The notes under the pieces are model-generated. The model had not been told where the DNA came from. It saw nothing but the letters and a program-made list of their open reading frames with translations, and searched no databases. This document shows, in pieces, positions 633 to 43,765 of a stretch of DNA of 43,765 nt. Within the stretch, counting starts at the first letter, position 1, and each line of letters begins with the position of its first letter. A program made the position numbers and the translations under genes. Where the stretch lies: sequence record ON286972.1. One strand, written 5' to 3'.

Positions 633-633
633 T

Positions 634-3726: not shown

Positions 3727-3962
3727 TTAAATGTAATATTGAAGTAAATGAATACACTACTAATCAATATAACGGTGAGAAAGAGTTTTCATTTAGTACA
3801 GTACAACATGTATTGAATTTCCCAGTACTTCCATCTATTGGTTCAGTACTGACAATCACAAATACGTATGATACCCAGTACGAGATCCTTGATATTGAGT
3901 ACAGAGCAAATCTTAGTTCCAGTGCAGATGTTGAAATCTATATCATCGTAGAAGAGGTATAA
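3723..3962 (+). CDS. hypothetical protein
   Basis: ATGA overlap with upstream gene. Confidence 0.7.
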   Translation: MIKCNIEVNEYTTNQYNGEKEFSFSTVQHVLNFPVLPSIGSVLTITNTYDTQYEILDIEYRANLSSSADVEIYIIVEEV

Positions 3963-24941: not shown

Positions 24942-25181
24942 ATGAAACTATCTTTTATACGTTTAGCAGAATTCTTCGGTACTGATATAATTACTTTACA
25001 ACAAATTGCAGACAATACTTCATTAAGTACACAAGAAGTACTTGACTTAGATGTGATAGAGTGTGATAATACTTCTATCGATTATAAAGAAGGTCTTGTC
25101 GAAAAAGATAAGATTCAGGCTAAGATTAATGGTGCTGGACGGGTTCAGTACTGGAAAGGAGTTTTAAGTCATGCCAGCTAA
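24942..25181 (+). CDS. hypothetical protein
   Basis: GAGG RBS. Confidence 0.7.
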   Translation: MKLSFIRLAEFFGTDIITLQQIADNTSLSTQEVLDLDVIECDNTSIDYKEGLVEKDKIQAKINGAGRVQYWKGVLSHAS

Positions 25182-26868
25182 ATTAACCCCTAAACAAGCA
25201 AAAGAAAAATTCAACAAAAAAGTATTAGAACATAACGTTCCAATTGAAGCTGATTATAGTAAGTATGAAAATGCCAAATTAAAAAACATCCAAGTAGTTT
25301 GCAATGATGTATTAAAACACAAATCAGGCATATCACAAATATATCTTATGGATCACGCAAACCTCACACACCCATCCAAAAAATTTGGTTGTCCTGAATG
25401 TGAAGACTGGTATAATGGTCATGCTAAAAGTTTAGATATTTTAATTGTTAGGGAAAGAATTAATTCTTGGATTAGTACTTATGGCGGGATTATTGATACG
25501 GTTAGTGGTGAAGTTGAAGTTTATAAAAATAATTCATCCAAAATACCATATATTTGTAAAAATGGAACTAAAAAAACGCTTACTATTTCTTCACTTGGCG
25601 ATGAAATCGGTTGTAATTGTTCTAAATGTAAAGCTGAATTAATATCAGAAATCGAAGATAACAATGAATATACATCCATGACTACTGTTGATGATTGTGT
25701 TACAATTTCCCATTTTAAATTTGGGGATGATGTTGCATTCTCGTGGATTTCACCATTGGAAATGAAAAAACATGGTTACTGTCTTGCCGAAAAAATGAAA
25801 GAAAAAGCATTGTCGGTTGGTAAAAATATTATTGGATATGCAATATCATCTCTTAGTGAATGGAAAAATGAAAAAACTCCTGTAATAACCGAACACGAAG
25901 GAGTATTATATCGTATTTCCAAAGCATCATATTTGATCAATAATAATATAGTACATAGACCACATTATACAAAAAATAATTTTTTATATTATTTTTACAA
26001 ATGTTCACCTAACAATCAACTTATTACACCAATCCTAATACCTGATGATATTGGTACAAAAAAGAAAATTAAAGTATGTTATAAATCATGTGGGTGTGAA
26101 TATGATATATCTGTGGACGTTATAATGAACAGAAATTTAAAAACTTGTGGAAACTGTAAAAATATAGATACTAATAAATTTATAGAACAGTGCTTGGAGT
26201 TCACTTCAAGTGGAGATTATATCTATGATAGAGTAAACTATATAAATCAAAGTACACCTGTAACTATAGTTCATAAAATTTACGGCGAATTCAAAAGTAC
26301 ACCACAAAATCACTTAATACATTTAAAAAACGGTTTGAAATATGATACAGCTAACTTTAAAATAAAAAATTTAACTCAATTTAAAATTAAAGCAAATGAA
26401 GTTCATAATAACTTATATAATTATGATAAAGTTGATTATGTAAATTCTTCAACGAAAGTATTAATAACTCATCCAGTATATGGAGACTTTTGGCAAACTC
26501 CAGCAAGTCACCTTGGTGGGTGTGGTCATCCACTTGCGGCTGGTCATTCTCAGCAATATGCATATATTCATAATATTTTGGATGGTGTTTTATCTGTAGC
26601 ATTGAAATATGGGATTGAAAAGCAGAAAGGTAAGAGGGTGATGCAGCAAAATAAAAAATCCATGTTTCAAGTTCAATCTCTGTATACTTATTTTTTTCCA
26701 TCTGTATACGAATGTAAGCAAGCTGAAAAAGAATGTAAGAAACTATTTGGTAAAGGTGTTTTAACTAAACAAGAAATGCCAGACGGGTATACTGAAACAA
26801 CTACACCAAACAACATAGATAAAATTATTGCCATCTATGAAAAATGGGGTGGGGTGAAACAAAACTAA
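25171..26868 (+). CDS. free-standing homing endonuclease-like protein (DUF723-type repeats, Zn knuckles, C-terminal GIY-YIG-like domain)
   Basis: YDKVDYVNSSTKVLITHPVYGDFWQTP repeats; CPEC, CSKC, CGNC; YAYI..LKYGI..R..AE..DGYTET. Confidence 0.7.
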   Translation: MPAKLTPKQAKEKFNKKVLEHNVPIEADYSKYENAKLKNIQVVCNDVLKHKSGISQIYLMDHANLTHPSKKFGCPECEDWYNGHAKSLDILIVRERINSWISTYGGIIDTVSGEVEVYKNNSSKIPYICKNGTKKTLTISSLGDEIGCNCSKCKAELISEIEDNNEYTSMTTVDDCVTISHFKFGDDVAFSWISPLEMKKHGYCLAEKMKEKALSVGKNIIGYAISSLSEWKNEKTPVITEHEGVLYRISKASYLINNNIVHRPHYTKNNFLYYFYKCSPNNQLITPILIPDDIGTKKKIKVCYKSCGCEYDISVDVIMNRNLKTCGNCKNIDTNKFIEQCLEFTSSGDYIYDRVNYINQSTPVTIVHKIYGEFKSTPQNHLIHLKNGLKYDTANFKIKNLTQFKIKANEVHNNLYNYDKVDYVNSSTKVLITHPVYGDFWQTPASHLGGCGHPLAAGHSQQYAYIHNILDGVLSVALKYGIEKQKGKRVMQQNKKSMFQVQSLYTYFFPSVYECKQAEKECKKLFGKGVLTKQEMPDGYTETTTPNNIDKIIAIYEKWGGVKQN

Positions 26869-30981: not shown

Positions 30982-33006
30982 TTATTTGTGTTTTATGTGT
31001 AAAGTGTCTAATATTGTATTGAACAATGATTTAGCAGAAATCATGATTACTTGATCAAAATCTTTAGTATAAGAAATATTAGCAGTACTGGAAGAATCTT
31101 TCACCTCATCCGGTAATGCATCAAACTCTTCTTTTTCCATAATCTTTTCAAGTTCTTCACGAGAAATGGCTTTTACGTTTTCAATAGTCCTTAGTTGTAT
31201 ATTATAATCTTTATAATACGAAACTAAGTTCGTTGCGTATGAACCATCTTTAGATGCTGTTCCAGTAAAATCATAACATCCTGTATCAGTACTAACCCAA
31301 TCGATTTTCCCTGAACTACCACTATATACACCTTTGTTGAACTTAATGTTAACAACATCACCAATAGTTTTCAATATACCACCTTTACATTCATTAAATG
31401 CGTTTAATTGATAACTTGTAGTCATATAGAATTTCGGTTCTAATGTAACAGTATCACCTACAGTTGCTTTCATATCAGAAACACTTAAGAACAATTCATT
31501 AAATCCTTTTGAATAAGTCTTGGTAATTGTTGTTCCATCCCTGTTAGTTACTGTGTATTCTAAGTCCAATTCACAAATACTATTCAATGATAAGTAAGGG
31601 ATATCAAATTTATCAGTACTAGCATCATAAGGACATCTTGAGGATGGTAGTATACCAGTAGGGTTTGGTACGTATTGAACTTTTGTTAACTCATACCCGC
31701 TTGCATTCGCTGGTGTAACTGTAATAGACGGTGTAGATATTCCTTTCATTCCACAGAAGTATATGTTATCTGGAAAATCATTTATTACGAAGTCAGTGAC
31801 AGGAATATCATAAGTATCTTTATCAGTCCAATTAAGAACAACATTAGAACTGGTTGGATCAACAATATGTTCACTAGAACCACAGAAATATACTGATTTG
31901 GTATTAGTAATCATTAGTAATGTTTTGGATGATGAGTTCAATTCAAGAACATCTTTCACTTCAAGACCAGATGGTAATGTCAATGGTAACTTCGTAAATG
32001 ATGTTAAATCTTGTTCATCTTTAACACCACTAGTCCCCGCCGGAAACTTACCTGAACCATAGAAAACACCTTTATTCGTCATGAAATACATGAACGGGGT
32101 TGATGTTCCTTTGTCAAATAGTTGAATGTCATCACATGTTAAACCATCAGGTAAATCCACTTTAGATGGAGTTCTATAAACACCAGGCTTAATACCACCT
32201 TCACCATTACTTACATCACCTAGTACATATAAATCTTTACCTAGTTTCAAGAACATTGATTTATTTTTAGCACACAAGAATGTATCATATGATTTATCAT
32301 CAATTGGTAGCTTGGTATATTCGGTGTATGTAGGCATTGAATCATCAATCCACGAACTATCACCACTAATGTAAATGTGATTGTTTCTGTCAATATAATA
32401 TGAATACACATCAGTACTGTTCATATATAAAGCATTTAGTGCATTTGTTTTCACTAAGTGATTGAACTTAAGAACTTGTTTTCCATCGTACTTATGGGAG
32501 TTGACACCAATATCACCATTTAGGCTACTACCAATTGAATATATATGACCACGTGGTAATAGAACTTGAACACCACTTTTGGTTAAATTATATTTGGAGT
32601 GCAAGAGATCGTTATATACAACTCTAACTTTCTTAAAGATATCAGTACATTCAATCCACGATTTAGATGGTGTACCATCCATTCCTATTATTGCCGGATC
32701 ACCATAATAATAAGCTTTATTTTCATATGATATTTTAAAAGATGATTTACCATCTTTTGTATTAGCACTGAAGTACACATCTTTACTATCTTTAATTGGA
32801 TAAGTACTATTCTCTACAAAAGTATTATATGAGATATCGTTGTTAGCACTATTAAGAACAAAAGAAGTAGATGTACTATTGGACTTATAGACTGCTACGG
32901 AAGATGTATCACTGAAATCAATTTTAGTGAACGTATCTTTGTATGTTTCGTTTAATAATCCTACATAAAAAACATCAGTGCCATCCATCAGTAACGAATA
33001 TAGCAT
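30982..33006 (-). CDS. RCC1-like beta-propeller protein, 3' part of a frameshifted gene
   Basis: LYVLGDVSNGEGG, FYGSG, YFCGS blades; joins 33919 ORF if 4 nt are removed. Confidence 0.65.
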   Translation of the reverse strand: MLYSLLMDGTDVFYVGLLNETYKDTFTKIDFSDTSSVAVYKSNSTSTSFVLNSANNDISYNTFVENSTYPIKDSKDVYFSANTKDGKSSFKISYENKAYYYGDPAIIGMDGTPSKSWIECTDIFKKVRVVYNDLLHSKYNLTKSGVQVLLPRGHIYSIGSSLNGDIGVNSHKYDGKQVLKFNHLVKTNALNALYMNSTDVYSYYIDRNNHIYISGDSSWIDDSMPTYTEYTKLPIDDKSYDTFLCAKNKSMFLKLGKDLYVLGDVSNGEGGIKPGVYRTPSKVDLPDGLTCDDIQLFDKGTSTPFMYFMTNKGVFYGSGKFPAGTSGVKDEQDLTSFTKLPLTLPSGLEVKDVLELNSSSKTLLMITNTKSVYFCGSSEHIVDPTSSNVVLNWTDKDTYDIPVTDFVINDFPDNIYFCGMKGISTPSITVTPANASGYELTKVQYVPNPTGILPSSRCPYDASTDKFDIPYLSLNSICELDLEYTVTNRDGTTITKTYSKGFNELFLSVSDMKATVGDTVTLEPKFYMTTSYQLNAFNECKGGILKTIGDVVNIKFNKGVYSGSSGKIDWVSTDTGCYDFTGTASKDGSYATNLVSYYKDYNIQLRTIENVKAISREELEKIMEKEEFDALPDEVKDSSSTANISYTKDFDQVIMISAKSLFNTILDTLHIKHK

Positions 33007-33919
33007 TTCTATTATTACATAAAGAAGTAATATTTTTTACTACTTTATTTGAATTATAGTTTGGTAACTTCTTTAATCCACGAACAAAATTATCACAAAT
33101 AATACCAGTACCATAGAAGTTATAATCTTTATCACAGTATATAAATGCTGTATCATATGGTGAAGTACTTAAATTCTTATAGAATGGGAATGGAGTGAAT
33201 GTGAATTGTAGAACCTTACGCAATTCCCCTACTGTCTCTGTTGGGAATTGTCTGTTTTTATTATTACCAATAAAAACAACTCTATCTGTTAGGAATGTGT
33301 ACATAATTCCATATGGTTTTACGTACAAATCATTATATCCCAATGATAATTTAGTTGGTGATGTTAGTGGTCCTGAGTTTATTTTGGTTTGATTAATTGA
33401 AAACTCATTAGAATTATAACCAGCCCCATATGTATTACCATTAGTACTTAAATAATATACAGTAGCTTCCCCTGCTCCAAGAAAAGTCTTTACATCAGTT
33501 GCTAACGTTTTTTGGAAAGTTGGATAAAATTTATTATATGTTCCCGTTCCCATCATCAGTTCACCATTGCGGTTATGACCACGAGCATATAGAATACCTT
33601 TGTCTGTATCTAAGAAGAACATACCATTATATGTTTTGTAAATCTTACCTTTTGTAATATCGAAATTGGAAAAATCATCACTAATATCAATGAATATTGT
33701 CTCAAGATTATCTTCAAGGGAGTTTAGAGATTTACCACAATACCATACTGAGTTATCTTTTTTAACAGCAACACAACCACACGGACTGGCATCAAAATAT
33801 GTTACATCGGAAAGAACCAGAGATAAGTTCTTTGTACTGCAATAGTTATCCATTGCATATAAATCGGAATCTTTAAGTATATATACGGAATTCCCAACCG
33901 CTTTAATCGAATTTATCAT
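32975..33919 (-). CDS. RCC1-like beta-propeller protein, 5' part of a frameshifted gene
   Basis: GAGGA RBS before ATG 33919; LYARGHNRNGEL, TYGAGYNS blades. Confidence 0.7.
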   Translation of the reverse strand: MINSIKAVGNSVYILKDSDLYAMDNYCSTKNLSLVLSDVTYFDASPCGCVAVKKDNSVWYCGKSLNSLEDNLETIFIDISDDFSNFDITKGKIYKTYNGMFFLDTDKGILYARGHNRNGELMMGTGTYNKFYPTFQKTLATDVKTFLGAGEATVYYLSTNGNTYGAGYNSNEFSINQTKINSGPLTSPTKLSLGYNDLYVKPYGIMYTFLTDRVVFIGNNKNRQFPTETVGELRKVLQFTFTPFPFYKNLSTSPYDTAFIYCDKDYNFYGTGIICDNFVRGLKKLPNYNSNKVVKNITSLCNNRNAIFVTDGWH

Positions 33920-33983: not shown

Positions 33984-34140
33984 TCAATTAAATGGGGAAT
34001 CTTTAACAAATGAATTCATGATGTACTTGATGAATTGCCCATACCAACGGATTCCTCAGTCCCAGCATACCACATGGTATTATCGAACTTTTTATCATTG
34101 TAGTATCATAACCACACCAAACATCATCAACATTAGTATT
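33984..34140 (-). pseudogene. decayed relic of a propeller-array gene
   Basis: NTNVDDVWCGYDTTMI / KFDNTMWYAG (1-nt shift) / SFVKDSPFN* resemble blade 1 and C-terminus of neighbours. Confidence 0.7.
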
Positions 34141-35491
34141 ACAACAATTGTATTTCTGTGAGTGTTTGATATGTTGTACCGTTGTACACACCTCTCCAAT
34201 ATACCCTACCTTCAGTACTAACCACTAATAATCCATATGTTGTAAACCCAAGAGTACCACCAACATACATAGCATCTTTAATTCGAATACCAATGTCTTC
34301 ATATGTAAATGAAGCGACTGCTCCCGCTTGCCACGAAGGACTAGCGTAGTAATCACTATAAACACCATGTGCTTTATATATTGATGTTGTTCCTGGTTCA
34401 AAAATTACAGTTCCACAGTAGTTCATTCGTATTTTAGTACTGGATGAAGTCGGTACATTTATACCTATGCCATCTTTTATCCCTGTAGTTAGGACGTTAA
34501 AACCACCCGCCACACGGTTGACGTCATTCTCACCGATTAAAAACATACCAACGTTGTAGCCCATATAATATACACTGCTACTGCCATTCCAGAAAGAAAA
34601 ACCACCACCATTACCACAGCGATATAGTTGTGAATTTGAGCAGTACATCATACCTTCGTTTGTCGCATCAAATTCATCTGCTGTTCCTATTGTAGCTACA
34701 GTAGTCCACGTTTTAATCACTTGGTTTGTACTAGCTGGTGTTTGTATACCATATCGTATATTATATCCCTTACCAACGATTGTACCATCTTCTAATTTAG
34801 CATAAAGTACAGGTCTATTACCAACAAAATACATATTATTGTGTGACATGTCTATTGTGCATCTTAATGAAACTACTTTTTGTGTCAATTGATTATCTTT
34901 AGTAAAAGAAGTAAAGTAGTAATCCGATGTTGAGTTGTTTATTAAACCTTGTATTGACAATCCCATATACCAGATTTCACCATTGCTGTTTAATGCTGCC
35001 AAAATACAACTATATTTTGAAGTGTATGCTGGTGATGTTGTTGAAGTTGCTGGTCCTTTATCATATCCACCACAGAATACCATCTCCACAACTTCACCTA
35101 CGTTCGAAAAATAAGAAGATACATTGATAAAACCATTTGTTATAAAAGGTGCTGTATTCATACTTGAATGTGTGAATATCCCATTTGCATATACACCACA
35201 AAAATGATATGAACCATCATTATCTTGGACTATTATTCCATTTGATAGTAACCAAAAATTGTTTACATTTTTTCTTACTAATTCAACTCCTGCACCATTG
35301 GTTGGTGTTATACCAAAAGAAACATATTTTGTTTGACCAATACCATATAAATTTCCATTAGTTGCTAGTATTGCACCAAACCAGTTCCCACCACCATTCC
35401 TATCATGACCCATACCAATGGAGTCAAATTTCTTCACAGTAGGGACTTCAACTTTATTCCCATACTCTAGCATTCTAACAAAAGGTAACAT
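34139..35491 (-). CDS. MLPFVRM-leader RCC1-like beta-propeller protein (450 aa)
   Basis: true start at MLPF with AAGGAGG RBS; LYGIG, IWYMG, VYWRG blades. Confidence 0.85.
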   Translation of the reverse strand: MLPFVRMLEYGNKVEVPTVKKFDSIGMGHDRNGGGNWFGAILATNGNLYGIGQTKYVSFGITPTNGAGVELVRKNVNNFWLLSNGIIVQDNDGSYHFCGVYANGIFTHSSMNTAPFITNGFINVSSYFSNVGEVVEMVFCGGYDKGPATSTTSPAYTSKYSCILAALNSNGEIWYMGLSIQGLINNSTSDYYFTSFTKDNQLTQKVVSLRCTIDMSHNNMYFVGNRPVLYAKLEDGTIVGKGYNIRYGIQTPASTNQVIKTWTTVATIGTADEFDATNEGMMYCSNSQLYRCGNGGGFSFWNGSSSVYYMGYNVGMFLIGENDVNRVAGGFNVLTTGIKDGIGINVPTSSSTKIRMNYCGTVIFEPGTTSIYKAHGVYSDYYASPSWQAGAVASFTYEDIGIRIKDAMYVGGTLGFTTYGLLVVSTEGRVYWRGVYNGTTYQTLTEIQLL

Positions 35492-35555
35492 ATATCCTCC
35501 TTTATTCATTATATTATATTTAATCAAAAAAGAAAAGCCAGTACAGAGTACTGGC
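35460..35555 (-). repeat. array junction repeat 1 (hairpin, T-tract, TAAATA, RBS, leader codons)
   Basis: GCCAGTAC-TCT-GTACTGGC TTTTCTTTTTTGATTAAATATAATATAATGAATAAAGGAGG..ATGTTACCTTTTGTTAGAATG. Confidence 0.95.
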
Positions 35556-35566
35556 ATTTAAAATAA

Positions 35567-36742
35567 TCAAAATGTAGGAAGTTTGAATTCTCTCATAACA
35601 GATGAACTGCTTGCAGATACATTATCTGGTGATTTCCCTGCGTAGTATAATTTATTATCAATGAACATATACAATGTTGCATCATTTCCTGCTACAAGTG
35701 ATTCACTTTTCTTAAATTTAACACCACTAGGTAAAATTGCTTCAACAAATGAACCTGATTCTCTTGTAGTATTATTTGCCAATTGACCATTGTTATTATA
35801 ACCAGTACTATAAATTTTACCTGAACTATAATATACGAGTCCACGAGTACTAGTGTTTTCTATTCGAATGAATTCACTATCATCTGGGACTGTAGTTGAT
35901 AGAACTGGGTTTAACTTATAAGCAGATGATACATTATTATTACCCAATTGACCATAACCTTGAAAGCCTAGTGTATACATAGGACATGATTCTGGTGTGC
36001 CTTTTGTTATAATACCAATATAATTCACACTACAAAAAATGTCTATTGCTTCTGTAATAGGTGTACCCTTATATTGAACCCAAGGGAATACATACGATTG
36101 TTGCTTACCATTTCCCAAAGTACCGGAAGTTGTTGTCCCAGTACGCCACATTGTATCATCAAGTTTAATAATCCAGTTAGCTGTCGTTATCGATGAACAG
36201 AATTTTTTAACATTATCCACTAAAAATGTAAATTGATTATAATATGATGCAGTGTTTATACCAAACTTAGCACCAGTATTATCACCTAACAAATATAAAC
36301 TATTATCTGTACCTAAAATCAAAGCATAATCATAACCCACGTATATATCTTTAATTCTTGAAATTCCAAATTGTGTAAAATAGCTTGTACATTCTGTGAA
36401 TGTTGTTATATTATTGGTTGTATTATTACCTAGCCATTTATCTAAACCACTATAAAAGAATCTATCATCATTTGTGCGTATTAGACAAAAAGCGTTCATT
36501 GTACTGCACCAAAAATCTTTAACATTGCTATATATTTTTGTCCATTCAGTTACTGCATTAGTATGACCTAAACCAAAAATTCCACCATTCTGAAGACCAA
36601 TAGCCCATATTGAACCATTTTTATCAAGCATCATTGTACATGTATGTGAATAACCACCCGATGGTGTAACTAATTTAACAAAATTGGGAATATATGGTAA
36701 AACTTTATTTCCATAATCCAACATTCTAACAAAAGGTAACAT
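35567..36742 (-). CDS. MLPFVRM-leader RCC1-like beta-propeller protein (391 aa)
   Basis: IWAIGLQNGGIFGLG, YTLGFQGYGQLGN, YSTGYNNNGQLAN. Confidence 0.9.
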   Translation of the reverse strand: MLPFVRMLDYGNKVLPYIPNFVKLVTPSGGYSHTCTMMLDKNGSIWAIGLQNGGIFGLGHTNAVTEWTKIYSNVKDFWCSTMNAFCLIRTNDDRFFYSGLDKWLGNNTTNNITTFTECTSYFTQFGISRIKDIYVGYDYALILGTDNSLYLLGDNTGAKFGINTASYYNQFTFLVDNVKKFCSSITTANWIIKLDDTMWRTGTTTSGTLGNGKQQSYVFPWVQYKGTPITEAIDIFCSVNYIGIITKGTPESCPMYTLGFQGYGQLGNNNVSSAYKLNPVLSTTVPDDSEFIRIENTSTRGLVYYSSGKIYSTGYNNNGQLANNTTRESGSFVEAILPSGVKFKKSESLVAGNDATLYMFIDNKLYYAGKSPDNVSASSSSVMREFKLPTF

Positions 36743-36809
36743 AATTCCTCCTTTATTCATTATACTATATTTAATCAAAAAAGAAATGCCAGCATCAAGT
36801 ACTGGCATT
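36710..36809 (-). repeat. array junction repeat 2
   Basis: same unit, hairpin with one mismatch. Confidence 0.95.
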
Positions 36810-36813
36810 ATTG

Positions 36814-38004
36814 TTATAGTTGTCTTGGTGTATCAAGTACATATCTATTTGTACTAGGACCACCATCATCATACGTTCCGGTTGAATATATATTTTTCAT
36901 ATCAGCAGTTAGAAAAGTACGATACGAACCGCGATATATTTTTATTTTATCATACATAGAATATGATATTTCTGCTGGCATTGGACATATAGTAAATCTA
37001 CCAATAGTAACATTAGAACCAACACCCAACGAACCAGCATAACTACTCGCATTTAAACCAGTTGCATATACACCAGTACTCGTAACTAGTATACTAGATT
37101 GTGTTGGGTATCCTGTATGAATTGAATACAAAGTTCCAGTTGGTAATGTCGTACTATTGCTCCCTAATACAGCAAGTGCCGAACTGGTTGTGGTATTGTT
37201 ACCCCATGCACCATTACTCGCTAAACCACCAACTAGAAACTGACGTGCACCAGTACTTGGATTCTCAACCAAAGCACTGACTGCACCACTTGAGCATCCA
37301 GTGTATTGTAACGTTTTTGTGTATGTTGTACTTGGTTTATATAAAGTATATTCATTAAATGGTGTCCATGTGGTACTGGTACTTATACCTGACGTACCAC
37401 CACCAATATATAAATTATTTTGTGTATCAAAAAACATTACACAGTTATTTGTTGACTGTATTTGTGCAATATCAACATTAGGCGTGACAGCTTTTACAAA
37501 TGATCCATCTGTTATTTGTTGAGTACTACCAGTACCATCAGCGAATTGTCTAGCCCCACTCCAACCAGTACTCCATATTGTATTATTATCCATTAATACC
37601 GTAAACCACGTAGTACCTCCATACATCTGTTTAATTGAAGTACTTGAACTTTGCGTGTACAAATTTTCAATATATTGGTTATAACTTAAAAACGTAGTAG
37701 TACTAGTTGGTAAACCAATATGATCACCATATCCACAATAAAAATAATTTGAGTCATTATCTTGTACTAACAAAGTTCCTTGTGACACCCAGAAATCTTT
37801 AACATTTTCTCTAATTAAGGTCCATGACTTTACTGCATTACTATTTCCTATACCAAACTTCCCAAAACTATTATTTCCACGTGCGTATAGTTGACCATCC
37901 GTATAAAGAACGACAACATCTAAATCAGTTGGTGTTATTTTCTTAATTTGAATAGGGACTGGTGTTATATTCCCATAATCAAACATTCTAACAAAAGGTA
38001 ACAT
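36814..38004 (-). CDS. MLPFVRM-leader RCC1-like beta-propeller protein (396 aa)
   Basis: LYARGNNSFGKFGIG, VYATGLN..GSLGVG. Confidence 0.9.
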   Translation of the reverse strand: MLPFVRMFDYGNITPVPIQIKKITPTDLDVVVLYTDGQLYARGNNSFGKFGIGNSNAVKSWTLIRENVKDFWVSQGTLLVQDNDSNYFYCGYGDHIGLPTSTTTFLSYNQYIENLYTQSSSTSIKQMYGGTTWFTVLMDNNTIWSTGWSGARQFADGTGSTQQITDGSFVKAVTPNVDIAQIQSTNNCVMFFDTQNNLYIGGGTSGISTSTTWTPFNEYTLYKPSTTYTKTLQYTGCSSGAVSALVENPSTGARQFLVGGLASNGAWGNNTTTSSALAVLGSNSTTLPTGTLYSIHTGYPTQSSILVTSTGVYATGLNASSYAGSLGVGSNVTIGRFTICPMPAEISYSMYDKIKIYRGSYRTFLTADMKNIYSTGTYDDGGPSTNRYVLDTPRQL

Positions 38005-38069
38005 ATTTCCCTCCTTTATTCATTATACTATATTTAATCAAAAAAGAAAAGCCAGTATCAAGTACTGGC
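37972..38069 (-). repeat. array junction repeat 3
   Basis: same unit; hairpin 38051-38069. Confidence 0.95.
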
Positions 38070-38075
38070 CTATAT

Positions 38076-39245
38076 TTAAACTGGTGAATCTAATACAAAT
38101 TCTAAACTACTAATGCCACCATATGTGACATTTGTCCCTGTGCTATATACAAAATTACCATCAGTTATATAAGTTCGGTTATACCCACCTGCCATCTGCG
38201 ACTTACTATAATCAAACCCATCAGGAACGATTGCTTTGGTATATACTAATGCATTATTAGATGTACCAATACCTAACATACCAGCTCCTGAAGATTTATT
38301 GTAGCCGCAACAATATATACCATCTGTTGTAGCAATAACTTGGTTATAATATGAAGTAATGTTAGCAATGCTTACTACATCACCGGGTGGCATTAGTGAA
38401 GCAGTTTGAACCTCAAATGCTCTATAATCACTGAGAGAACCATTTATCCCATCTGCTTGTGCACCAAATATTCTCGAACCGCCATTTGCGATGATGGTTT
38501 TACCAGTGGGATCAGTACCAATTGCCATTGCCATTGAAGTACTATTCTCCATATAGTACTTGATATTAATTGTATTTCTTAAGCTGGTAGGAGCACCATA
38601 ATATATAGTATATAACTTACCTCCTGAACTTGTAACTGCATTTACTCTTCCTGTATAAAATAGCCATCCTTGGTTTGTAACATAACCGTGCATTAAATTA
38701 CTTGCAAACAATTTAACAGGTAATTGATCTGCTGCGGTCGGAACAGTACTTTTGACGAATTTTCTAGCAACATTGTTAGTTGTTGTCCCATCACCCAACT
38801 GACCATCACCCCCTGCTCCAGTACTCCATATTGTTTGGTCTGTTAGTAATACACTTGTAGTCTGATAACTAACTGCTATATCTAATATTGGTAATGTTAA
38901 CGTATCGAATGTTGGCATAGCAGAAGTCCATATTGATACTGCTGCCCCTGGCATACCAACAGTTGTTGAACTTCCACTGTACCATATTTCATCATTGCTT
39001 TTCTTAATAACTATCGACGTGGCTCCCATCCAAAAATCTTGAACATCAGAAGTGCTAAAAGTCCATGTAGTAACAATATTTTTGTGACCTAAACCCAAAA
39101 GACCATTTGTATTCTCACCACGCACATATAAATCACCACTGTTTGTTAAAACAGCAACATTATAGTTGTTAGCTAGTATTTTTTTAATATTTGGTTTAGC
39201 AGGTGCAATATTCCCATACTCTAACATTCTTACAAAAGGTAACAT
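38076..39245 (-). CDS. MLPFVRM-leader RCC1-like beta-propeller protein (389 aa)
   Basis: LYVRGENTNGLLGLG, IWSTGAGGDGQLGDG. Confidence 0.9.
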   Translation of the reverse strand: MLPFVRMLEYGNIAPAKPNIKKILANNYNVAVLTNSGDLYVRGENTNGLLGLGHKNIVTTWTFSTSDVQDFWMGATSIVIKKSNDEIWYSGSSTTVGMPGAAVSIWTSAMPTFDTLTLPILDIAVSYQTTSVLLTDQTIWSTGAGGDGQLGDGTTTNNVARKFVKSTVPTAADQLPVKLFASNLMHGYVTNQGWLFYTGRVNAVTSSGGKLYTIYYGAPTSLRNTINIKYYMENSTSMAMAIGTDPTGKTIIANGGSRIFGAQADGINGSLSDYRAFEVQTASLMPPGDVVSIANITSYYNQVIATTDGIYCCGYNKSSGAGMLGIGTSNNALVYTKAIVPDGFDYSKSQMAGGYNRTYITDGNFVYSTGTNVTYGGISSLEFVLDSPV

Positions 39246-39309
39246 AATTCCTCCTTTATTCATTATATTATATTTAATCCAAATAAGAAAGCCAGTATCA
39301 AGTACTGGC
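39210..39309 (-). repeat. array junction repeat 4
   Basis: same unit; hairpin 39291-39309. Confidence 0.95.
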
Positions 39310-39315
39310 ATTGTG

Positions 39316-40425
39316 TTATTTCGGTAAATCAATTTTAGTAAAGACTGCAACATCCTCGCTTGCACCGGGAATGGCGTAATACGTTCCAGTACTATATACA
39401 TCTCCATTTTTGGTTAATATTGAAGTCAAACCATCACTAAAAAGAACATCCCTAATCTCACTAACTTCAACGGGTAATTGTAAATTTGTAGCACTATATA
39501 TAGCACCAGTTTGAGAATTGTTTAATCCCAAACCACGGTTCGCCCCAACACCCTTCTGATATGTACTGGTAATTACCATTTGTGTAGCAGTATTTAATGC
39601 AGGTGAATTCGTCATAAACAACGGAGAACTATTAGGCAAAGTACTTACAGGAACTGCACGGAATGTAGTCGTACCTGAACTAAGAAAGTTTGGAGTTTGA
39701 CCACATACGAAATATGATGTACCATTATAGTAATTAAATGCATTACCACCAATCGCTGCATCGATTACACCAGAACTACGTAATCCCCAAGTGTTAATTT
39801 GTGTTTGGTCCCCTGTACCATGCTGCCCACTGCTATTCCATCCAGAACTATATAGCTTATTATCTAATGTAATATACATACTATCATTTGCATTAGTCAT
39901 TACTTTACGCACGTTAGTAGCACATTGAGTTAATGTGTAAATCGATGATGAGCCAATACCTAAAGAACCACGATATCCATTATCTCCTGCACCATAGAGT
40001 ACTGAACTAGTGCTAAGTACAAATATTAAACCATTTGTACATACAATATTAGCAATTTCACTCACTGGTATAGCATTGGTAAACCAATTAGTCCTTTCAA
40101 CTAATATAGTACTGTAAGAAGTAGTTGTAGAAGATGAGAACCAGTACGTTTCACCCGATGTCCATATCGTATTATCATTTTTAATAATAACAAGTGTACG
40201 ACCACCCACGAAAAAATTAGAAACATCTGAACTTACTAATATCCATGAAGATACCGTGTTGTTATTACCATTTCCAGATTCACCACCTTGATTTCTACCT
40301 ATGTAATATAAATCATGTGAATCAGTCAATAAGAATTGACCCTGTGTAGAAGCACCAACTTTAATTATATTTTTAGGACCGGGTACAATATTCCCGTACA
40401 CTAACATTCTTCCAAAAGGTAACAT
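39316..40425 (-). CDS. MLPF-leader RCC1-like beta-propeller protein (369 aa)
   Basis: LYYIGRNQGGESGNG, LYSSGWNSSGQHGTG. Confidence 0.9.
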   Translation of the reverse strand: MLPFGRMLVYGNIVPGPKNIIKVGASTQGQFLLTDSHDLYYIGRNQGGESGNGNNNTVSSWILVSSDVSNFFVGGRTLVIIKNDNTIWTSGETYWFSSSTTTSYSTILVERTNWFTNAIPVSEIANIVCTNGLIFVLSTSSVLYGAGDNGYRGSLGIGSSSIYTLTQCATNVRKVMTNANDSMYITLDNKLYSSGWNSSGQHGTGDQTQINTWGLRSSGVIDAAIGGNAFNYYNGTSYFVCGQTPNFLSSGTTTFRAVPVSTLPNSSPLFMTNSPALNTATQMVITSTYQKGVGANRGLGLNNSQTGAIYSATNLQLPVEVSEIRDVLFSDGLTSILTKNGDVYSTGTYYAIPGASEDVAVFTKIDLPK

Positions 40426-40490
40426 AATTCCTCCTTTATTCATTATACTATATTTAATACAAAAAAGAAAAGCCAGTACTCTGTACTGGC
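40390..40490 (-). repeat. array junction repeat 5
   Basis: same unit; hairpin 40472-40490. Confidence 0.95.
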
Positions 40491-40498
40491 ATATTACA

Positions 40499-41641
40499 TT
40501 ATTTCCACGGTAGAAGTGAATCAGGAACTCTGGTTGGTACTCTAACGGCTGGAACATTTCCAAGTTCAGGTAAACCACTCATATACAAATTGTTATTTTC
40601 ATCAATTATCATTGAATAGAAATTATCAATTACGAAGCCTGAAATTCGTCTTCCTTCTAATGCATCAAGAACCATTTCGGTGAAAGTTAGTATATTTTCG
40701 GATGTTTGATTAACACCACATGCACCATAGGTATTTCGACCACAAGTATATAACTTATTATTATTTTTAACAACACATCCATTCCCTTCGTTGTTGGATA
40801 AACCACCCACCAACTCTATTTCACCTTGGAATGATAAATTGGGAATTAATGTACTCATTGGTACTGCTGATACTGTACCTACACCAGCTTGACCATATGC
40901 ATTTGGTGAAGCAACCTTCACTGAACCATCATTAAGAAATATATATGAAGTACGGTATGTATTTACAGCTTGTATAGCATTGGTGATAGTATTGTCTTTT
41001 GTAAAACTTAATATATTTGATGTTTTTGTACTACCAGGAGCAACAGTATTTCCTGCATACCAATAGGAGCCATCATCAAGTACTAACCCAGTACTGAGCA
41101 AAGAACAGCCATAACTTTTAACATTTTCTATAGTGCTGTATCTGAACGATGTGACATTAGCTGTTGACGCGTTACCAAATACACCACCTTCGCCAGAACC
41201 ACAGTAGAACCATTTTCCATTTTTTAAAAATACACGCAAATTCTGCCCAACAGCAATACCATCAATATCATCAGCACTGACACCAAAATCAGTGAAGTAC
41301 TGGGTTACATCAATCCAAACCCCATTTGTATTTGTTCCGATTTGTGGCATTACTATACTAGCACCTGTGAACCAAATAGTTCCATCATTCTTAATGGCAA
41401 TGGAACCAAGAACACCACCCCAGTAACGTTCAATATTATTATTCACACGGGTCCATACGGTGGATGATTGTAATGAACCATTACCACCTTGTCCAAATGA
41501 AGATGAACCATACCAGTACAAGTCACCATTAACATGCAAATAAAAACGAGTATTATAATTTGCTTGTAATCTATTTTTAAATAGAGGTTTTGGTTCCGGT
41601 GCAATATTCCCGTACTCTAACATTCTAACAAAAGGTAACAT
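40499..41641 (-). CDS. MLPFVRM-leader RCC1-like beta-propeller protein (380 aa)
   Basis: LYWYGSSSFGQGGNG, LYTCGRNTYGACGV. Confidence 0.9.
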   Translation of the reverse strand: MLPFVRMLEYGNIAPEPKPLFKNRLQANYNTRFYLHVNGDLYWYGSSSFGQGGNGSLQSSTVWTRVNNNIERYWGGVLGSIAIKNDGTIWFTGASIVMPQIGTNTNGVWIDVTQYFTDFGVSADDIDGIAVGQNLRVFLKNGKWFYCGSGEGGVFGNASTANVTSFRYSTIENVKSYGCSLLSTGLVLDDGSYWYAGNTVAPGSTKTSNILSFTKDNTITNAIQAVNTYRTSYIFLNDGSVKVASPNAYGQAGVGTVSAVPMSTLIPNLSFQGEIELVGGLSNNEGNGCVVKNNNKLYTCGRNTYGACGVNQTSENILTFTEMVLDALEGRRISGFVIDNFYSMIIDENNNLYMSGLPELGNVPAVRVPTRVPDSLLPWK

Positions 41642-41710
41642 AATTTCCTCCTTTATTCATTATACTATATTTAATACAAATAAGAAATGCCAGTACTCTG
41701 TACTGGCATT
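41600..41710 (-). repeat. array junction repeat 6
   Basis: same unit; 11-bp stem 41686-41710. Confidence 0.95.
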
Positions 41711-41713
41711 ATA

Positions 41714-42856
41714 TTATTTCCACGGTAGAAGTGAATCAGGAACCCTTGTCGGTACATTTGTAGTAGACACCCCATCAAGATTTGGTACACCGCATGTATA
41801 TAAATTATCAGCATCGTCAACTAACATCGTATAGTTATATCCCCTACAAAAACTACTAACATTACGACCTTCTAATGCAGTAAGAATCATTTCAGTGAAT
41901 GTTGTTATATTTGTCGAGGTTGAACCAACACCACATTGTCCATTTGAATTAAGACCACATAAAAATAACTTATTATCATTTTTAATTATACAGGATGGTC
42001 CAGTAAGGTTTGTACCAAGCTCACCCACTAACTCTATTTCACCTTGGAATGCTAAATTTGGAATTAATGTACTCATAGGGGCTGGTGTTGTATTCCCAGT
42101 ACCTGCTTGACCACGTTCGTTGGAAGATGCAACTTTAACTGTTCCATCACTAAGAAATATATAGGAAGTTTCAATTGTATTGACTGCTTTAATTGCAGTG
42201 CTGATAGAAGTTTCTTGTGTAAATCTTAGCACGTTTTGTGCTGACGTTCCCGATATAAACGTATTACCTGCATACCAATATGTACCATCATTGAGTACTA
42301 ATGCAGTACTTCGAATTGCACAACCAGCACTTCGAACATTTTCTATAGTACTGTACGTGAATTGTGAAACGCTTGCCGATGAACCATTTCCGAATACACC
42401 ACCACTCCCAGCACCACAGAAGAACCACTTTCCATTTTTCAAAAATACACGCATACACGCAGATATAACAATACTATCAATATCATCAGCACTGACACCG
42501 AAATCAGCAAAGTGCGATGTCACATCAACCCAAACACCGTTAGTGTTTGATGCAATTACTGGAATAACAGAACTTGTACCAGTGTACCAAATAGTACCAT
42601 CTTTCTTTATCGCTATTGTTCCTTGAACACCACCCCAATATCGTACAACATTTGTATTGACGAGAGTCCATGCGGTTGAAGAGTTCAATGAACCATTACC
42701 ACCTTGACCATATGATGAAGAACCAAACCAATATAGATTACCATTGGTGTGTAAATAAAATTTGGCATCTGCCGAGCATTGTAACCTATTTTTTAATCGT
42801 GGTGCGGGTTCCGGTGCAATATTCCCGTACTCTAACATTCTAACAAAAGGTAACAT
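41714..42856 (-). CDS. MLPFVRM-leader RCC1-like beta-propeller protein (380 aa), close paralog of 40499 gene
   Basis: same length, identical first 17 and last 12 residues. Confidence 0.9.
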   Translation of the reverse strand: MLPFVRMLEYGNIAPEPAPRLKNRLQCSADAKFYLHTNGNLYWFGSSSYGQGGNGSLNSSTAWTLVNTNVVRYWGGVQGTIAIKKDGTIWYTGTSSVIPVIASNTNGVWVDVTSHFADFGVSADDIDSIVISACMRVFLKNGKWFFCGAGSGGVFGNGSSASVSQFTYSTIENVRSAGCAIRSTALVLNDGTYWYAGNTFISGTSAQNVLRFTQETSISTAIKAVNTIETSYIFLSDGTVKVASSNERGQAGTGNTTPAPMSTLIPNLAFQGEIELVGELGTNLTGPSCIIKNDNKLFLCGLNSNGQCGVGSTSTNITTFTEMILTALEGRNVSSFCRGYNYTMLVDDADNLYTCGVPNLDGVSTTNVPTRVPDSLLPWK

Positions 42857-42868
42857 AATTCCTCCATA

Positions 42869-43765
42869 TTATTTAAAAACATACTGCGTATTAACACGAG
42901 TGCCATTGTCAAAACCAAGTACATAAAATATCTCAGCACTATTCTTAGAACCAAATAACGCACCAGTACTACTACTCAAAGTAGTATTAACCGCTAAGGG
43001 AATCCATATGTCTTCTTCTGCATCGTATCTCAATAAATTTAATGCACCATACGACACTGCATATATATTTTTATCATATGTACTGTAACATATTTTACTA
43101 GGGTTATTACCACCAACTGGTGCTATGTTAGACCACACCGCACTTTGTATATGATATTTTTGTGCAGTACTAGTACCTTGACCAGTAATATATATGTAAG
43201 TACCATCCGTACACATATCACCACCTCCATTGTTATTTGTTCCATCACTTGTACCTAATGATGACCATGTATTAGTACTTGGAGTATAACTGTATAACGA
43301 ATTATTAGTAGGCGAACCCCACAAATATATCTTATCCCCAGCAGTAATCATCTTACTATACGCCAGTTGACTAGGCTTCCCAATACTGTTAGTGTTCAGA
43401 ATCCATGTATTTGTACTTATATTATATACATAAAAATTATTACTACTATTACCTGAACCACCAAACAAATATATTTTTCCCTGATAAGCACATAACGCAC
43501 TACCAAATGTAGATACAGGTGCATTGGCTAATTGTGACCACGTTCTTGTAGTTAAATTAAAACTCCATAACTGATTATCCGTCTGCACCGCATTCTGTAT
43601 ACCACCAAATATATAAGCAATATTACTTTCCGCATCATACGTATAACCAAAGTTATTTCGTGCTGAAGGTACTGGTGATGTAGTAAATTGTGTTCGTACT
43701 CCACCATTTGGGCCAGGTAATGGACCTACATTCCCGAACTCAAACATTCTTACAAAAGGTAACAT
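42869..43765 (-). CDS. MLPFVRM-leader Kelch-repeat beta-propeller protein (298 aa)
   Basis: YIFGG, IYLFGG, LWSFNLTTRTWSQL, YVYNISTNTW Kelch motifs; ATG is the last codon of the window. Confidence 0.9.
   Translation of the reverse strand: MLPFVRMFEFGNVGPLPGPNGGVRTQFTTSPVPSARNNFGYTYDAESNIAYIFGGIQNAVQTDNQLWSFNLTTRTWSQLANAPVSTFGSALCAYQGKIYLFGGSGNSSNNFYVYNISTNTWILNTNSIGKPSQLAYSKMITAGDKIYLWGSPTNNSLYSYTPSTNTWSSLGTSDGTNNNGGGDMCTDGTYIYITGQGTSTAQKYHIQSAVWSNIAPVGGNNPSKICYSTYDKNIYAVSYGALNLLRYDAEEDIWIPLAVNTTLSSSTGALFGSKNSAEIFYVLGFDNGTRVNTQYVFK

What the first reader, a model, noticed from the sequence alone, without database searches (positions are those of the whole stretch)
34139..43765. Cassette-like array of eight beta-propellers sharing a portable MLPFVRMLEYGN N-terminal peptide
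Seen: eight tandem genes start with near-identical 12-residue leaders (MLPFVRMLEYGN, ..LDYGN, ..FDYGN, MLPFGRMLVYGN, ..FEFGNV). A Pro-rich linker follows, then highly diverged propeller bodies of 298-450 aa. The leader is not a Sec or lipoprotein signal (no hydrophobic core, no lipobox). Established: RCC1/BLIP-II and Kelch propellers are binding scaffolds. Inference: the leader is a docking or loading tag that plugs interchangeable binding domains onto a common hub, such as a virion appendage or a packaging/ejection route. That would give a modular repertoire of receptor-binding or host-protein-binding heads. The array probably continues past the window end.
Basis: partly seen in the sequence, partly recalled or inferred. 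Interest (0 to 1): 0.9.

Follow-up and report, generated by a model that had tools for sequence, protein, structure and literature searches.

The report
Shared N-terminal tag on virion proteins
A giant E. coli phage carries a row of eight genes for unrelated binding domains that all start with the same flexible 12-residue peptide; the peptide stays on such proteins in a relative's virus particles and most likely plugs them onto a common, still unidentified site of the particle, an arrangement I did not find described in the papers I could search.

Summary
The window is the last 43.8 kb of Escherichia phage A4 (Asteriusvirus, 355 kb). On the minus strand lie eight genes, seven RCC1-like and one Kelch propeller. 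All start with MLPF[VG]RM[LF]x[YF]GN followed by a Pro-rich linker.

The array does not continue. The record is cut at the first ATG, and the next gene is divergent.

The tag is portable. In Rak2-like jumbo phages, 140 distinct ORFs carry it on RCC1, Kelch, ConA/LamG-like and glycine-rich bodies. It was absent from 185,579 bacterial and archaeal genomes.

AlphaFold2 leaves residues 1-20 unstructured, so the tag is not a propeller strand. Tag-bearing proteins were detected in virions of phAPEC6, GAP32 and CBB. CBB peptides cover tag residues 7-13 and 10-20, so the tag is not cleaved off.

Tags follow the genome rather than the body. Paralogs are 26% identical in body and 85% in tag. One ortholog pair is 327/328 identical in body DNA but 30/36 in tag DNA. 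This indicates cassette exchange or 5' gene conversion.

Best reading: a retained virion-docking tag for interchangeable binding heads. The hub and the location (outside or inside the capsid) are unknown. The label 'DNA condensation protein' is unsupported.

The parts
42869..43765 (-). A4_245, Kelch-type six-blade propeller, 298 aa. Tag is codons 1-12 (43730-43765); the linker follows.
   Evidence: Pfam Kelch families above cut-off. AF2 pLDDT 87.3, with residues 1-21 below 50. Leader confirmed.
41714..42856 (-). A4_244, RCC1-like seven-blade propeller, 380 aa. Tag at 42821-42856. It follows A4_245 after 12 nt that hold only a ribosome-binding site.
   Evidence: Pfam RCC1/RCC1_2. AF2 pLDDT 89, residues 1-20 below 50, first strand at residue 25. 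Foldseek match to UVR8/RCC1, TM 0.76.
40499..41641 (-). A4_243, RCC1-like, 380 aa. Tag at 41606-41641.
   Evidence: Body 98.9% identical to phAPEC6 gp001 while the tag is 75% identical.
39316..40425 (-). A4_242, RCC1-like, 369 aa. Tag at 40390-40425 (MLPFGRMLVYGN).
   Evidence: Body 97% identical to phAPEC6 and 121Q orthologs.
38076..39245 (-). A4_241, RCC1-like, 389 aa. Tag at 39210-39245.
   Evidence: Body 79% identical to phAPEC6 gp003, which was detected in virions.
36814..38004 (-). A4_240, RCC1-like, 396 aa. Tag at 37969-38004.
35567..36742 (-). A4_239, RCC1-like, 391 aa. Tag at 36707-36742.
   Evidence: No close ortholog in phAPEC6 or 121Q.
34139..35491 (-). A4_238, 450 aa, the most diverged RCC1-like body and the last tagged gene. 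Tag at 35456-35491.
   Evidence: No Pfam hit. PHROG 4219 at E 2e-16. Body 94.6% identical to an ortholog in metagenome contig OERM01000102.1.
41642..41713 (-). Conserved 5' unit upstream of A4_243: terminator hairpin GCCAGTAC-N3-GTACTGGC plus T-run, a late-promoter-like TTAAATATAGTATAAT, and the RBS AAAGGAGG.
40426..40498 (-). The same 5' unit, upstream of A4_242.
39246..39315 (-). The same 5' unit, upstream of A4_241.
38005..38075 (-). The same 5' unit, upstream of A4_240.
36743..36813 (-). The same 5' unit, upstream of A4_239.
35492..35566 (-). The same 5' unit, upstream of A4_238.
32975..33919 (-). A4_237, a weak RCC1-like gene without the tag, directly downstream of the array.
   Evidence: Pfam WD40_RLD at E 1e-6. 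PHROG 4219. No leader.
30982..32988 (-). A4_236, 668 aa: an RCC1-like N-terminal half plus about 280 aa of unassigned C-terminal sequence, without the tag. It overlaps the end of A4_237.

Best explanation
The array encodes a set of interchangeable, small, single-domain binding heads: RCC1-like and Kelch propellers here, and ConA/LamG-like and glycine-rich domains in relatives. All are built into the virion.

Each head starts with a 12-residue peptide, M-[LI]-P-F-x-[RK]-[IML]-hydrophobic-x-Y-G-N, on a Pro-rich tether of about 8-12 residues. The peptide is not part of the fold and stays on the mature protein. I infer that it docks into one common site of a virion protein, most likely an external appendage such as the hair-like fibres of these phages. 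One hub could then carry many different heads.

Seven of the eight genes have their own late-type promoter and ribosome-binding site, and six are preceded by a terminator hairpin. A4_244 follows the Kelch gene after only a ribosome-binding site. The nearly identical 110-nt 5' unit (terminator, promoter, RBS and tag codons) also serves as the homology through which whole heads are exchanged between phages or homogenised within a genome.

Shown: the tag, its portability, its disorder in models, virion presence, its retention in CBB virions, and recombination at the tag/body junction.
Inferred: docking to a common hub, external display, and binding of host-surface ligands.
For: 1. Portability. 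The tag occurs only 8 times in the whole A4 genome, all in the array. It is found on 140 distinct ORFs in Rak2-like jumbo phages and metagenome contigs. The bodies are RCC1 (88), several ConA/LamG-like groups, Kelch (7), Gly_rich_2 (6) and a few orphans, all 170-450 aa. There were no hits in 185,579 bacterial and archaeal species genomes. Cellular RCC1 and Kelch relatives lack it.

2. Not part of the fold. AF2 models of A4_244 (pLDDT 89, pTM 0.87) and A4_245 (87.3, 0.86) leave residues 1-20/21 below pLDDT 50 with no secondary structure. The first strands start at residues 25 and 24.

3. Selection acts on the peptide. Conserved P3, R6, Y10 and G11 use 2-4 synonymous codons each. The 5'UTR plus tag RNA shows no structure, z +0.85.

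4. Virion association. phAPEC6 gp003, 005, 006, 007, 009 and 010 (PMC7247149 Table 1). GAP32_001 by mass spectrometry; GAP32_002 only through its RefSeq label 'virion structural protein' and its mass-spectrometry-detected CBB homolog CBB_553. CBB_536, 537, 548, 549, 551, 552 and 553 (PMC5259590).

5. Retention. The CBB peptide table holds LLQYGNK (tag residues 7-13 of CBB_553, preceded by R) and YANVIVEYATK (residues 10-20 of CBB_548, preceded by K).

6. Late expression is likely. ATAAATA lies upstream of 14 of 16 structural genes, against 0.005 expected per 70 nt. The array units carry TTAAATA.

7. The tag tracks the genome rather than the body. Within-genome paralogs are 26% identical in body and 85% in tag. 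Between-genome orthologs are 93% in body and 87% in tag. For A4_243 against phAPEC6 gp001, body DNA is 327/328 identical, tag codons 30/36 and linker 32/36.

8. The design has a precedent in the same phage group. K64-1 tailspikes with different bodies share conserved N-termini.
Against: - No partner was identified, and no co-fold could be run with the tools.
- Nothing here places the heads outside rather than inside the capsid.
- Virion mass-spectrometry coverage in phAPEC6 is low (1-4 peptides, 3-17%), so stoichiometry is unknown and carry-over cannot be formally excluded.
- The hexapeptide MLPFxR itself was not seen by mass spectrometry. It is short, and the search database used longer ORFs, so the extreme N-terminus is unverified.
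- Retention was shown only in CBB, not in A4 or phAPEC6.
- Within-genome tag uniformity could come from gene conversion alone, without a co-evolving partner.
- The array is not more variable between Asteriusviruses than the neighbouring accessory region.
- The late-promoter assignment rests on a motif with one mismatch.
Confidence: 0.55

Rival explanations
1. Internal-cargo tag. The peptide targets the heads to the scaffolding core or inner body of the prohead. They would then be packaged with the DNA and ejected into the cell, where they bind host proteins. This works like the T4 capsid-targeting sequence but without cleavage.
For: The tag is short, N-terminal and shared by unrelated virion proteins. 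phAPEC6 has an inner body of unknown composition, and its authors suggested the RCC1-like proteins for it. Propellers are protein-binding scaffolds.
Against: The tag is retained in mature CBB virions, whereas the T4 sequence is removed by the prohead protease (established knowledge). The position that would be the acidic cleavage residue is not conserved: position 9 is K, E, N, Q, T or S. The A4 proteins are weakly acidic to neutral, pI 5.3-8.0, not basic DNA binders. The body classes (ConA/LamG-like, Gly-rich, Kelch) match PHROGs of tail, baseplate and very large virion proteins. Peptide counts are too low for a body of roughly 19 MDa, which is my own rough estimate from the rod dimensions.
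Confidence: 0.15
2. Hitch-hiker of a DNA unit. The 36 tag-coding bases are conserved because they belong to the 110-nt promoter/RBS/recombination unit that is homogenised by gene conversion. The peptide itself would have no docking role and would at most favour translation initiation.
For: Within A4 the first 21 coding bases are identical apart from the two wildcard positions of the pattern, and the upstream 70 nt are near-identical. Tags are genome-specific. The breakpoint lies at the tag/linker.
Against: Across genera the peptide is kept while codons change: CCA, CCT and CCG; TAC and TAT; four Gly codons; AGA, AGG and CGT. The tag is kept on bodies only 20-30% identical. There is no RNA structure. 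A disordered, invariant N-terminal motif retained in the virion is typical of a binding motif.
Confidence: 0.1
3. Assembly or quality-control handle. The tag is read by a phage chaperone, or by the phage's Clp-type unfoldase/adaptor set, during folding or incorporation of beta-rich heads. It would not be bound by a structural hub.
For: A4 annotates a ClpA-like protein, ClpP-like proteins, a 'protease adapter protein', two GroES-like proteins and tail-fibre chaperones. The tag is exposed and N-terminal.
Against: There is no evidence of any link. The tag persists in the finished particle. A Met-Leu start is not expected to lose its Met, so no classical N-degron is exposed (established knowledge of methionine aminopeptidase specificity).
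Confidence: 0.08
4. Self-polymerising beads. The N-terminal strand of one head inserts into the next head, like donor-strand exchange in chaperone-usher pili. This would build the 100-nm hairs from the heads themselves.
For: CBB has hairs about 119 nm long. Four of the six mass-spectrometry-detected structural proteins that GAP32 lacks are tag-bearing: CBB_536, 537, 551 and 552.
Against: Four unrelated folds would each need an acceptor groove. AF2 shows complete, closed domains. Peptide counts are modest. CBB heads ran in a gel slice together with other proteins of 24-26 kDa, consistent with monomers.
Confidence: 0.05
5. The leader is simply the closing ('velcro') strand of each propeller.
For: N-terminal strands close many propellers (established knowledge).
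Against: Two confident AF2 models leave residues 1-20/21 unstructured. The same tag sits on non-propeller ConA/LamG-like and Gly-rich bodies. It is far more conserved than any blade.
Confidence: 0.02

Closest known systems
Conserved N-terminal anchor regions of tailspikes and tail fibres in phages with several receptor-binding proteins. Examples: Klebsiella jumbo phage K64-1 / RaK2 group; from my own knowledge, also CBA120- and G7C-type adaptors.
   Same: Tandem genes for virion proteins with a shared N-terminus and unrelated C-terminal bodies. The same phage group is involved: five K64-1 spikes start M..L[IT]Q[PA]KGS.S and three start MSL.[NQ]L.[SP][ST]N. Evolution is mosaic, cassette by cassette.
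   Different: Known anchors are folded, usually trimeric domains of tens to hundreds of residues on long fibrous or beta-helical enzymes. Here the shared part is 12 residues predicted to be disordered, and the bodies are small globular, apparently monomeric domains. There is no sequence similarity, and the attachment site is unknown.
Capsid-targeting sequence of phage T4 internal proteins
   Same: A short N-terminal peptide shared by unrelated proteins that end up in the particle.
   Different: The T4 sequence is cut off by the prohead protease (established knowledge). Here tag peptides are found in mature virions and no conserved cleavage residue exists. Location inside the head is untested.
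Dockerin-cohesin assembly of cellulosomes
   Same: It works alike: many different functional modules carry one common plug, joined by a Pro-rich linker, that fits a common socket.
   Different: Dockerins are folded, roughly 70-residue Ca-binding modules. There is no homology, and no socket protein is known here.
Head and tail decoration adhesins such as T4 Hoc (Ig-like domains displayed on the capsid)
   Same: Non-essential-looking, lectin- or Ig-type domains on the outside of virions, thought to give weak adherence to surfaces.
   Different: Hoc binds through a folded C-terminal domain and is a single gene. Here a repertoire of 8-17 heads shares an N-terminal peptide.
RCC1 / UVR8 / BLIP-II and Kelch beta-propellers
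   Same: The fold: Foldseek TM 0.76 to UVR8, and Pfam RCC1 and Kelch hits.
   Different: Nothing supports Ran-GEF or chromatin functions. The database label 'DNA condensation protein' is a name transfer. The proteins are not basic.

Membership tests
RCC1-like repeat propeller (Pfam PF00415 / PF13540 / PF25390) | RCC1 repeat signature above the family cut-off | tested here: met
   RCC1 and/or RCC1_2 score above their gathering scores in five of the seven (A4_239, 241, 242, 243, 244). A4_240 scores just below (18.9 against 22). A4_238 has no Pfam hit but matches PHROG 4219.
RCC1-like repeat propeller (Pfam PF00415 / PF13540 / PF25390) | Seven-bladed propeller fold | tested here: met
   AF2 model with pLDDT 89. 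The best PDB matches are UVR8, RPGR, HERC2 and RCC1, at E 2e-23 and TM 0.76.
Regulator of chromosome condensation / 'DNA condensation protein' (functional label) | Basic, DNA- or chromatin-binding, or a Ran partner | tested here: not met
   pI 5.3-8.0 and about 6% K+R. Bacteria have no Ran (established knowledge). The label is a name transfer.
Kelch propeller | Kelch motifs above cut-off and six four-stranded blades | tested here: met
   Kelch_1, 2, 3, 4 and 6 and PF24681 all score above cut-off. The AF2 model has 24 strands and pLDDT 87.
T4-type capsid-targeting sequence | Short N-terminal peptide shared by unrelated virion proteins | tested here: met
T4-type capsid-targeting sequence | Removed by the prohead protease in the mature particle | tested here: not met
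   Tryptic peptides covering tag residues 7-13 and 10-20 are present in CBB virions.
T4-type capsid-targeting sequence | Protein located inside the head and ejected | not testable with these tools
   The published proteomes give no localisation data.
Tailspike / tail-fibre N-terminal anchor modules | Conserved N-terminus with variable body in tandem virion genes | tested here: met
   Virion mass spectrometry.
Tailspike / tail-fibre N-terminal anchor modules | Folded (usually trimeric) anchor domain with a known docking partner | tested here: not met
   The tag is 12 residues and unstructured in the models. The partner is unknown, and no solved phage structure contains these proteins.
Sec / Tat / lipoprotein signal peptide | Hydrophobic core of 10 or more residues, with a cleavage site or lipobox | tested here: not met
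   Direct reading of the 8 leaders: charged R6 and E/D9, followed by Pro-rich sequence. The tag is retained in the virion.

The most novel reading that the evidence does not exclude
Rak2-like jumbo phages own a minimal plug-and-display system. A 12-residue peptide lets any small binding domain be hung on the hair-like fibres of head and tail. Whole heads are traded between phages at the conserved 5' unit, while the plug stays matched to the resident socket. Each particle would then carry a mixed, quickly renewable wardrobe of lectin-like adhesins. A second, different plug (M-[NI]-E-[MIL]-[LM]-[MI]-x-G) on homologous heads in Certrevirus would mean the principle arose more than once.
Probability: 0.3. 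Interest if true: 0.85.

Novelty: new variant of a known kind. Interest (0 to 1): 0.72.

Why it matters
- It gives a testable identity to a large, mislabelled gene family ('DNA condensation proteins') that fills 10-20 kb of many jumbo-phage genomes.
- It offers a handle on the unexplained hairy appendages of these phages.
- It describes the shortest shared virion-attachment signal I know of: 12 residues serving four unrelated folds.
- It shows a concrete route, a conserved 5' unit with a breakpoint at the tag/linker, by which binding modules are shuffled in nature.
- For annotation, start codons and product names of these genes need correcting in many records.

Tried and rejected
- Closing-strand idea. 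Rejected by the two AF2 models and by the non-propeller bodies.
- Array continuing past the window. Rejected.
- Tag on other A4 proteins. A six-frame scan of the genome, in pieces and allowing up to 4 mismatches, found none outside the array.
- RNA element in the 5'UTR plus tag. No structure, z +0.85.
- Array as a special hot spot of divergence. Not supported: the neighbouring accessory region is covered just as poorly by relatives.
- Synteny with the K64-1 depolymerase array. Not syntenic: that array follows nrdD. No MLPF tag was found in the 58 kb of K64-1 that I read.
- Solved structures. No phage entry holds these proteins.
- Literature. The papers on phAPEC6, CBB, 121Q and jumbo-phage genomics note the paralogs but not the shared N-terminus. 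phAPEC6 has no peptide-level supplement on hand.
- Hub search. Not achieved. Co-folding is not possible with the tools, and no conserved neighbour gene flanks the arrays.
- Slip. I stopped, used them in no search, alignment or argument, and do not repeat them here.


Full report
WHAT THE WINDOW IS. Megablast places the region at 100% identity on Escherichia phage A4 (ON286972.1, 355,528 bp, genus Asteriusvirus, host E. coli LF82). The window is the last 43,765 bases of that record, so window position equals record position minus 311,763. A4 is a Rak2-like jumbo myovirus of bacteria.

THE OBSERVATION. Eight consecutive minus-strand genes (A4_245 to A4_238) start at 43765, 42856, 41641, 40425, 39245, 38004, 36742 and 35491. 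Their leaders are MLPFVRMFEFGN, MLPFVRMLEYGN (four times), MLPFGRMLVYGN, MLPFVRMFDYGN and MLPFVRMLDYGN. The 21-nt pattern ATGTTACCTTTTGNNAGAATG occurs eight times in the window, against none in 100 shuffles.

Pfam calls six bodies RCC1-like and one Kelch. A4_238 has no Pfam hit but matches the PHROGs RCC1 family. Residues 13-24 hold 11% proline against 2% further on, measured over 91 complete tag-bearing proteins.

The longer ORFs in a mechanical list (MPVL..IKYSIMNKGGI-MLPF) are a read-through of the intergenic unit. Several database proteins and one phAPEC6 gene carry that spurious extension.

THE ARRAY ENDS AT THE WINDOW END. The GenBank record was cut exactly at the ATG of the Kelch gene. 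Its promoter/RBS unit lies at record bases 1-30 on the minus strand, and the next gene, A4_246, is divergent. Downstream of the array lie two weak RCC1-like genes without the tag, A4_237 and A4_236.

CASSETTE ANATOMY. Six intergenic units of about 70 nt are nearly identical. Each holds:
- a hairpin GCCAGTAC-N3-GTACTGGC with a T-run, scored as a terminator on the minus strand (12 terminator-like sites in the region against 5.4 expected);
- then TTAAATATAGTATAAT;
- then AAAGGAGG and the ATG.

ATAAATA lies upstream of 14 of 16 A4 structural genes that I inspected. The genome-wide frequency predicts 0.005 per 70-nt window. A4 encodes a late sigma factor. The array units carry TTAAATA, one mismatch away, so late transcription is likely but not shown. 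The second gene, A4_244, follows the Kelch gene after only 12 nt and has no promoter or terminator unit of its own.

THE TAG IS PORTABLE.
- Within A4. A six-frame scan of the A4 genome, in pieces and allowing up to four mismatches, finds the tag only in these eight genes.
- In protein searches. All phage-type relatives of the Kelch and RCC1 bodies carry it, even at 25-34% body identity. Cellular relatives do not.
- In other genera. Munch has 17 tandem genes, all starting [MV]IPF. Serratia phage BF has nine, all starting MLPF. CBB has seven plus two. GAP32 has three, and phAPEC6 twelve.
- In collections. A degenerate DNA pattern found 25 stretches in IMG/VR, 22 of them on contigs of 348-378 kb. 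A stricter version of the pattern found 19 stretches in metagenomes and none in 185,579 bacterial and archaeal species genomes.

Altogether there are 140 distinct tagged ORFs. Their bodies cluster into:
- RCC1-like (88);
- several ConA/LamG-like groups (Pfam Laminin_G_3);
- Kelch (7);
- Gly_rich_2 (6);
- a few orphans.
All are 170-450 aa. No enzyme or large fibrous protein carries the tag.

THE TAG IS NOT PART OF THE FOLD. AlphaFold2 with alignments gave confident models: A4_244 with pLDDT 89.0 and pTM 0.87, and A4_245 with 87.3 and 0.86. In both, residues 1-20/21 have pLDDT below 50 and no secondary structure, and the first strands begin at residues 25 and 24. The RCC1-like model matches UVR8 and RCC1 (E 2e-23, TM 0.76).

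SELECTION IS ON THE PEPTIDE. In the 100 ORFs of the first set, the shares by column are as follows.

| Position | Residues (share) |
|---|---|
| 1 | M 99% |
| 2 | L 64%, I 36% |
| 3 | P 100% |
| 4 | F 100% |
| 6 | R 80% |
| 10 | Y 86% |
| 11 | G 82% |
| 12 | N 86% |

Positions 3 and 4 are fixed partly by the search pattern. However, all consecutive array genes that I listed by position rather than by pattern have P-F there: 8 in A4, 17 in Munch, 9 in BF and 9 in CBB. The conserved residues use several synonymous codons: Pro CCA 50, CCT 44, CCG 5; Tyr TAC 47, TAT 39; four Gly codons; four Arg codons. The 5'UTR plus tag RNA is not structured, z +0.85.

THE PROTEINS ARE IN VIRIONS AND KEEP THE TAG.
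- phAPEC6 virion proteome. It lists gp003, 005, 006, 007, 009 and 010 with 1-4 peptides and 3-17% coverage (PMC7247149 Table 1). These are tagged array members.
- GAP32. GAP32_001, a tagged RCC1-like protein, was a mass-spectrometry-identified structural protein (PMC5259590). GAP32_002, a tagged ConA-like protein, is labelled 'virion structural protein' in RefSeq.
- CBB. CBB_536, 537, 548, 549, 551, 552 and 553 were detected with 2-8 peptides and 9.5-50.7% coverage, and all carry the tag.
- CBB peptide table. It holds LLQYGNK, preceded by R, which is residues 7-13 of CBB_553. It also holds YANVIVEYATK, preceded by K, which is residues 10-20 of CBB_548.

The tag is therefore present in the mature particle. 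The first hexapeptide was not seen. That is uninformative, because it is short and the search database used longer ORF models.

TAGS FOLLOW THE GENOME, NOT THE BODY. Mean tag identity is 81% within genomes and 60% between genomes.

| Comparison | Body identity | Tag identity |
|---|---|---|
| Paralogs within one genome | 26% | 85% |
| Orthologs in different genomes | 93% | 87% |

At DNA level, A4_243 against phAPEC6 gp001 is 327/328 identical in the body, but 30/36 in the tag codons, 32/36 in the linker and 63/70 in the promoter/RBS.

Neighbouring cassettes differ widely in their distance to phAPEC6 and 121Q: 99%, 97%, 90%, 80% and 64% identity, and three have no close ortholog. Either bodies are exchanged between phages with a breakpoint at the tag/linker, or the 5' unit is homogenised within a genome by gene conversion. 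Both make the 110-nt unit a recombination module. Whether the genome-specific dialects also reflect co-evolution with a partner is open.

WHAT IT IS NOT.
- The A4 proteins are weakly acidic to neutral (pI 5.3-8.0), so the labels 'DNA condensation protein' and 'regulator of chromosome condensation' are name transfers.
- The tag is not a secretion or lipoprotein signal, by direct reading.
- It is not a T4-type cleaved capsid-targeting sequence, because it is retained and has no conserved cleavage residue.

MOST LIKELY MECHANISM. This part is inferred. The exposed, invariant peptide on a Pro-rich tether is a short linear motif that binds one socket on a virion protein. The socket could then carry any of the heads.

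The head classes (lectin-type jelly rolls, propellers and a glycine-rich domain) match PHROGs of tail, baseplate and very large virion proteins. These phages bear unexplained hair-like fibres on head and tail. I therefore favour external display of adhesin-like heads.

The same phage group offers a precedent for a shared N-terminus with variable bodies. Five K64-1 tailspikes share one N-terminal motif and three share another.

Internal packaging without cleavage is the main rival. I could not identify the hub. Co-folding is not available, no solved structure contains these proteins, and no conserved neighbour gene exists.

A PARALLEL TAG. In Certrevirus (Vequintavirinae), two RCC1-like proteins of phage F4M1E begin MIELMMTG and MIELMLAG. 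The ConA-like virion proteins of F4M1E and PBES02, homologs of GAP32_002 from residue 15 onward, begin MNEIMIIG and MNEMLMLG. With only four examples this is a lead. It suggests lineage-specific tags on shared head families.

NOVELTY. The papers I could search record the paralogs and their presence in virions, and they speculate on DNA organisation. None mentions the shared N-terminus. I class the finding as a new variant of a known kind, namely modular virion proteins with a common attachment end. It is unusual for the 12-residue size of the tag and for the four unrelated folds it serves.

LIMITS AND SLIP.
- Two tagged ORFs in relatives, one in 121Q and one in a metagenome contig, are cut short by one premature stop each. 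A 269-aa RCC1-like gene in phAPEC6 and 121Q is shorter than its relatives. I did not analyse these further.
- I stopped and used neither for anything.

Noticed in passing
window 30982-33919 (-): Two RCC1-like genes without the tag (A4_237, and A4_236 with about 280 extra C-terminal residues) sit directly downstream of the array and overlap each other. phAPEC6 has no counterpart next to its array.
   Followed up: partly
L011 2811-5140; L040 2462-3112; L062 4995-5645: Certrevirus phages F4M1E and PBES02 carry a different shared N-terminus (M-[NI]-E-[MIL]-[LM]-[MI]-x-G) on RCC1-like and ConA/LamG-like virion proteins. The latter are homologous to the tagged heads of jumbo phages.
   Followed up: partly
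L042 21594-46472 (Klebsiella phage K64-1): The tailspike/depolymerase array shares two kinds of conserved N-termini: five genes start M..L[IT]Q[PA]KGS.S and three start MSL.[NQ]L.[SP][ST]N. The array follows nrdD and is not syntenic with the A4 tag array.
   Followed up: partly
L014 1-14200 (phAPEC6): The annotation misses four tagged ORFs, which start at 3, 2434, 6063 and 7325. Its 'gp004' is a wrong-frame ORF lying over a 244-aa tagged glycine-rich gene, and gp002 starts too far upstream.
   Followed up: partly
L012 (Serratia phage BF), L030 (Yersinia phage fHe-Yen9-04), L026: Eneladusvirus genomes hold a second tag dialect, MLPFPIISNT..., which lacks R6 and YGN, on most heads. The canonical MLPFARIVEYGN is kept on one ConA-like head. 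This would fit two sockets in one phage.
   Followed up: no
window 1863-3020 (-), 20140-21678 (+): Two genes match 'virion structural protein' PHROGs. The first is the only other minus-strand gene in the left part of the window, and it has an ATAAATA late-type motif upstream.
   Followed up: partly
window 42180-42626 (+): A 148-aa antisense ORF lies inside A4_244. It is most likely spurious.
   Followed up: no
window 8174-9136 (+), 11122-11400 (+): The record annotates two sigma-70-family factor genes in the early-looking plus-strand block. HNH and endonuclease genes lie at 25171-26868.
   Followed up: no
L032 (121Q), L043 (metagenome contig OERM01000102.1): One tagged ORF in each is cut short by a single premature stop. 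These look like decaying cassettes inside otherwise intact arrays.
   Followed up: no
record ON286972.1 bases 1-4200 (L001): Divergent from the array lies a long run of small plus-strand ORFs of about 60-70 aa. This is probably the large tandem family noted for 121Q by Hua et al. (PMC5646251).
   Followed up: no
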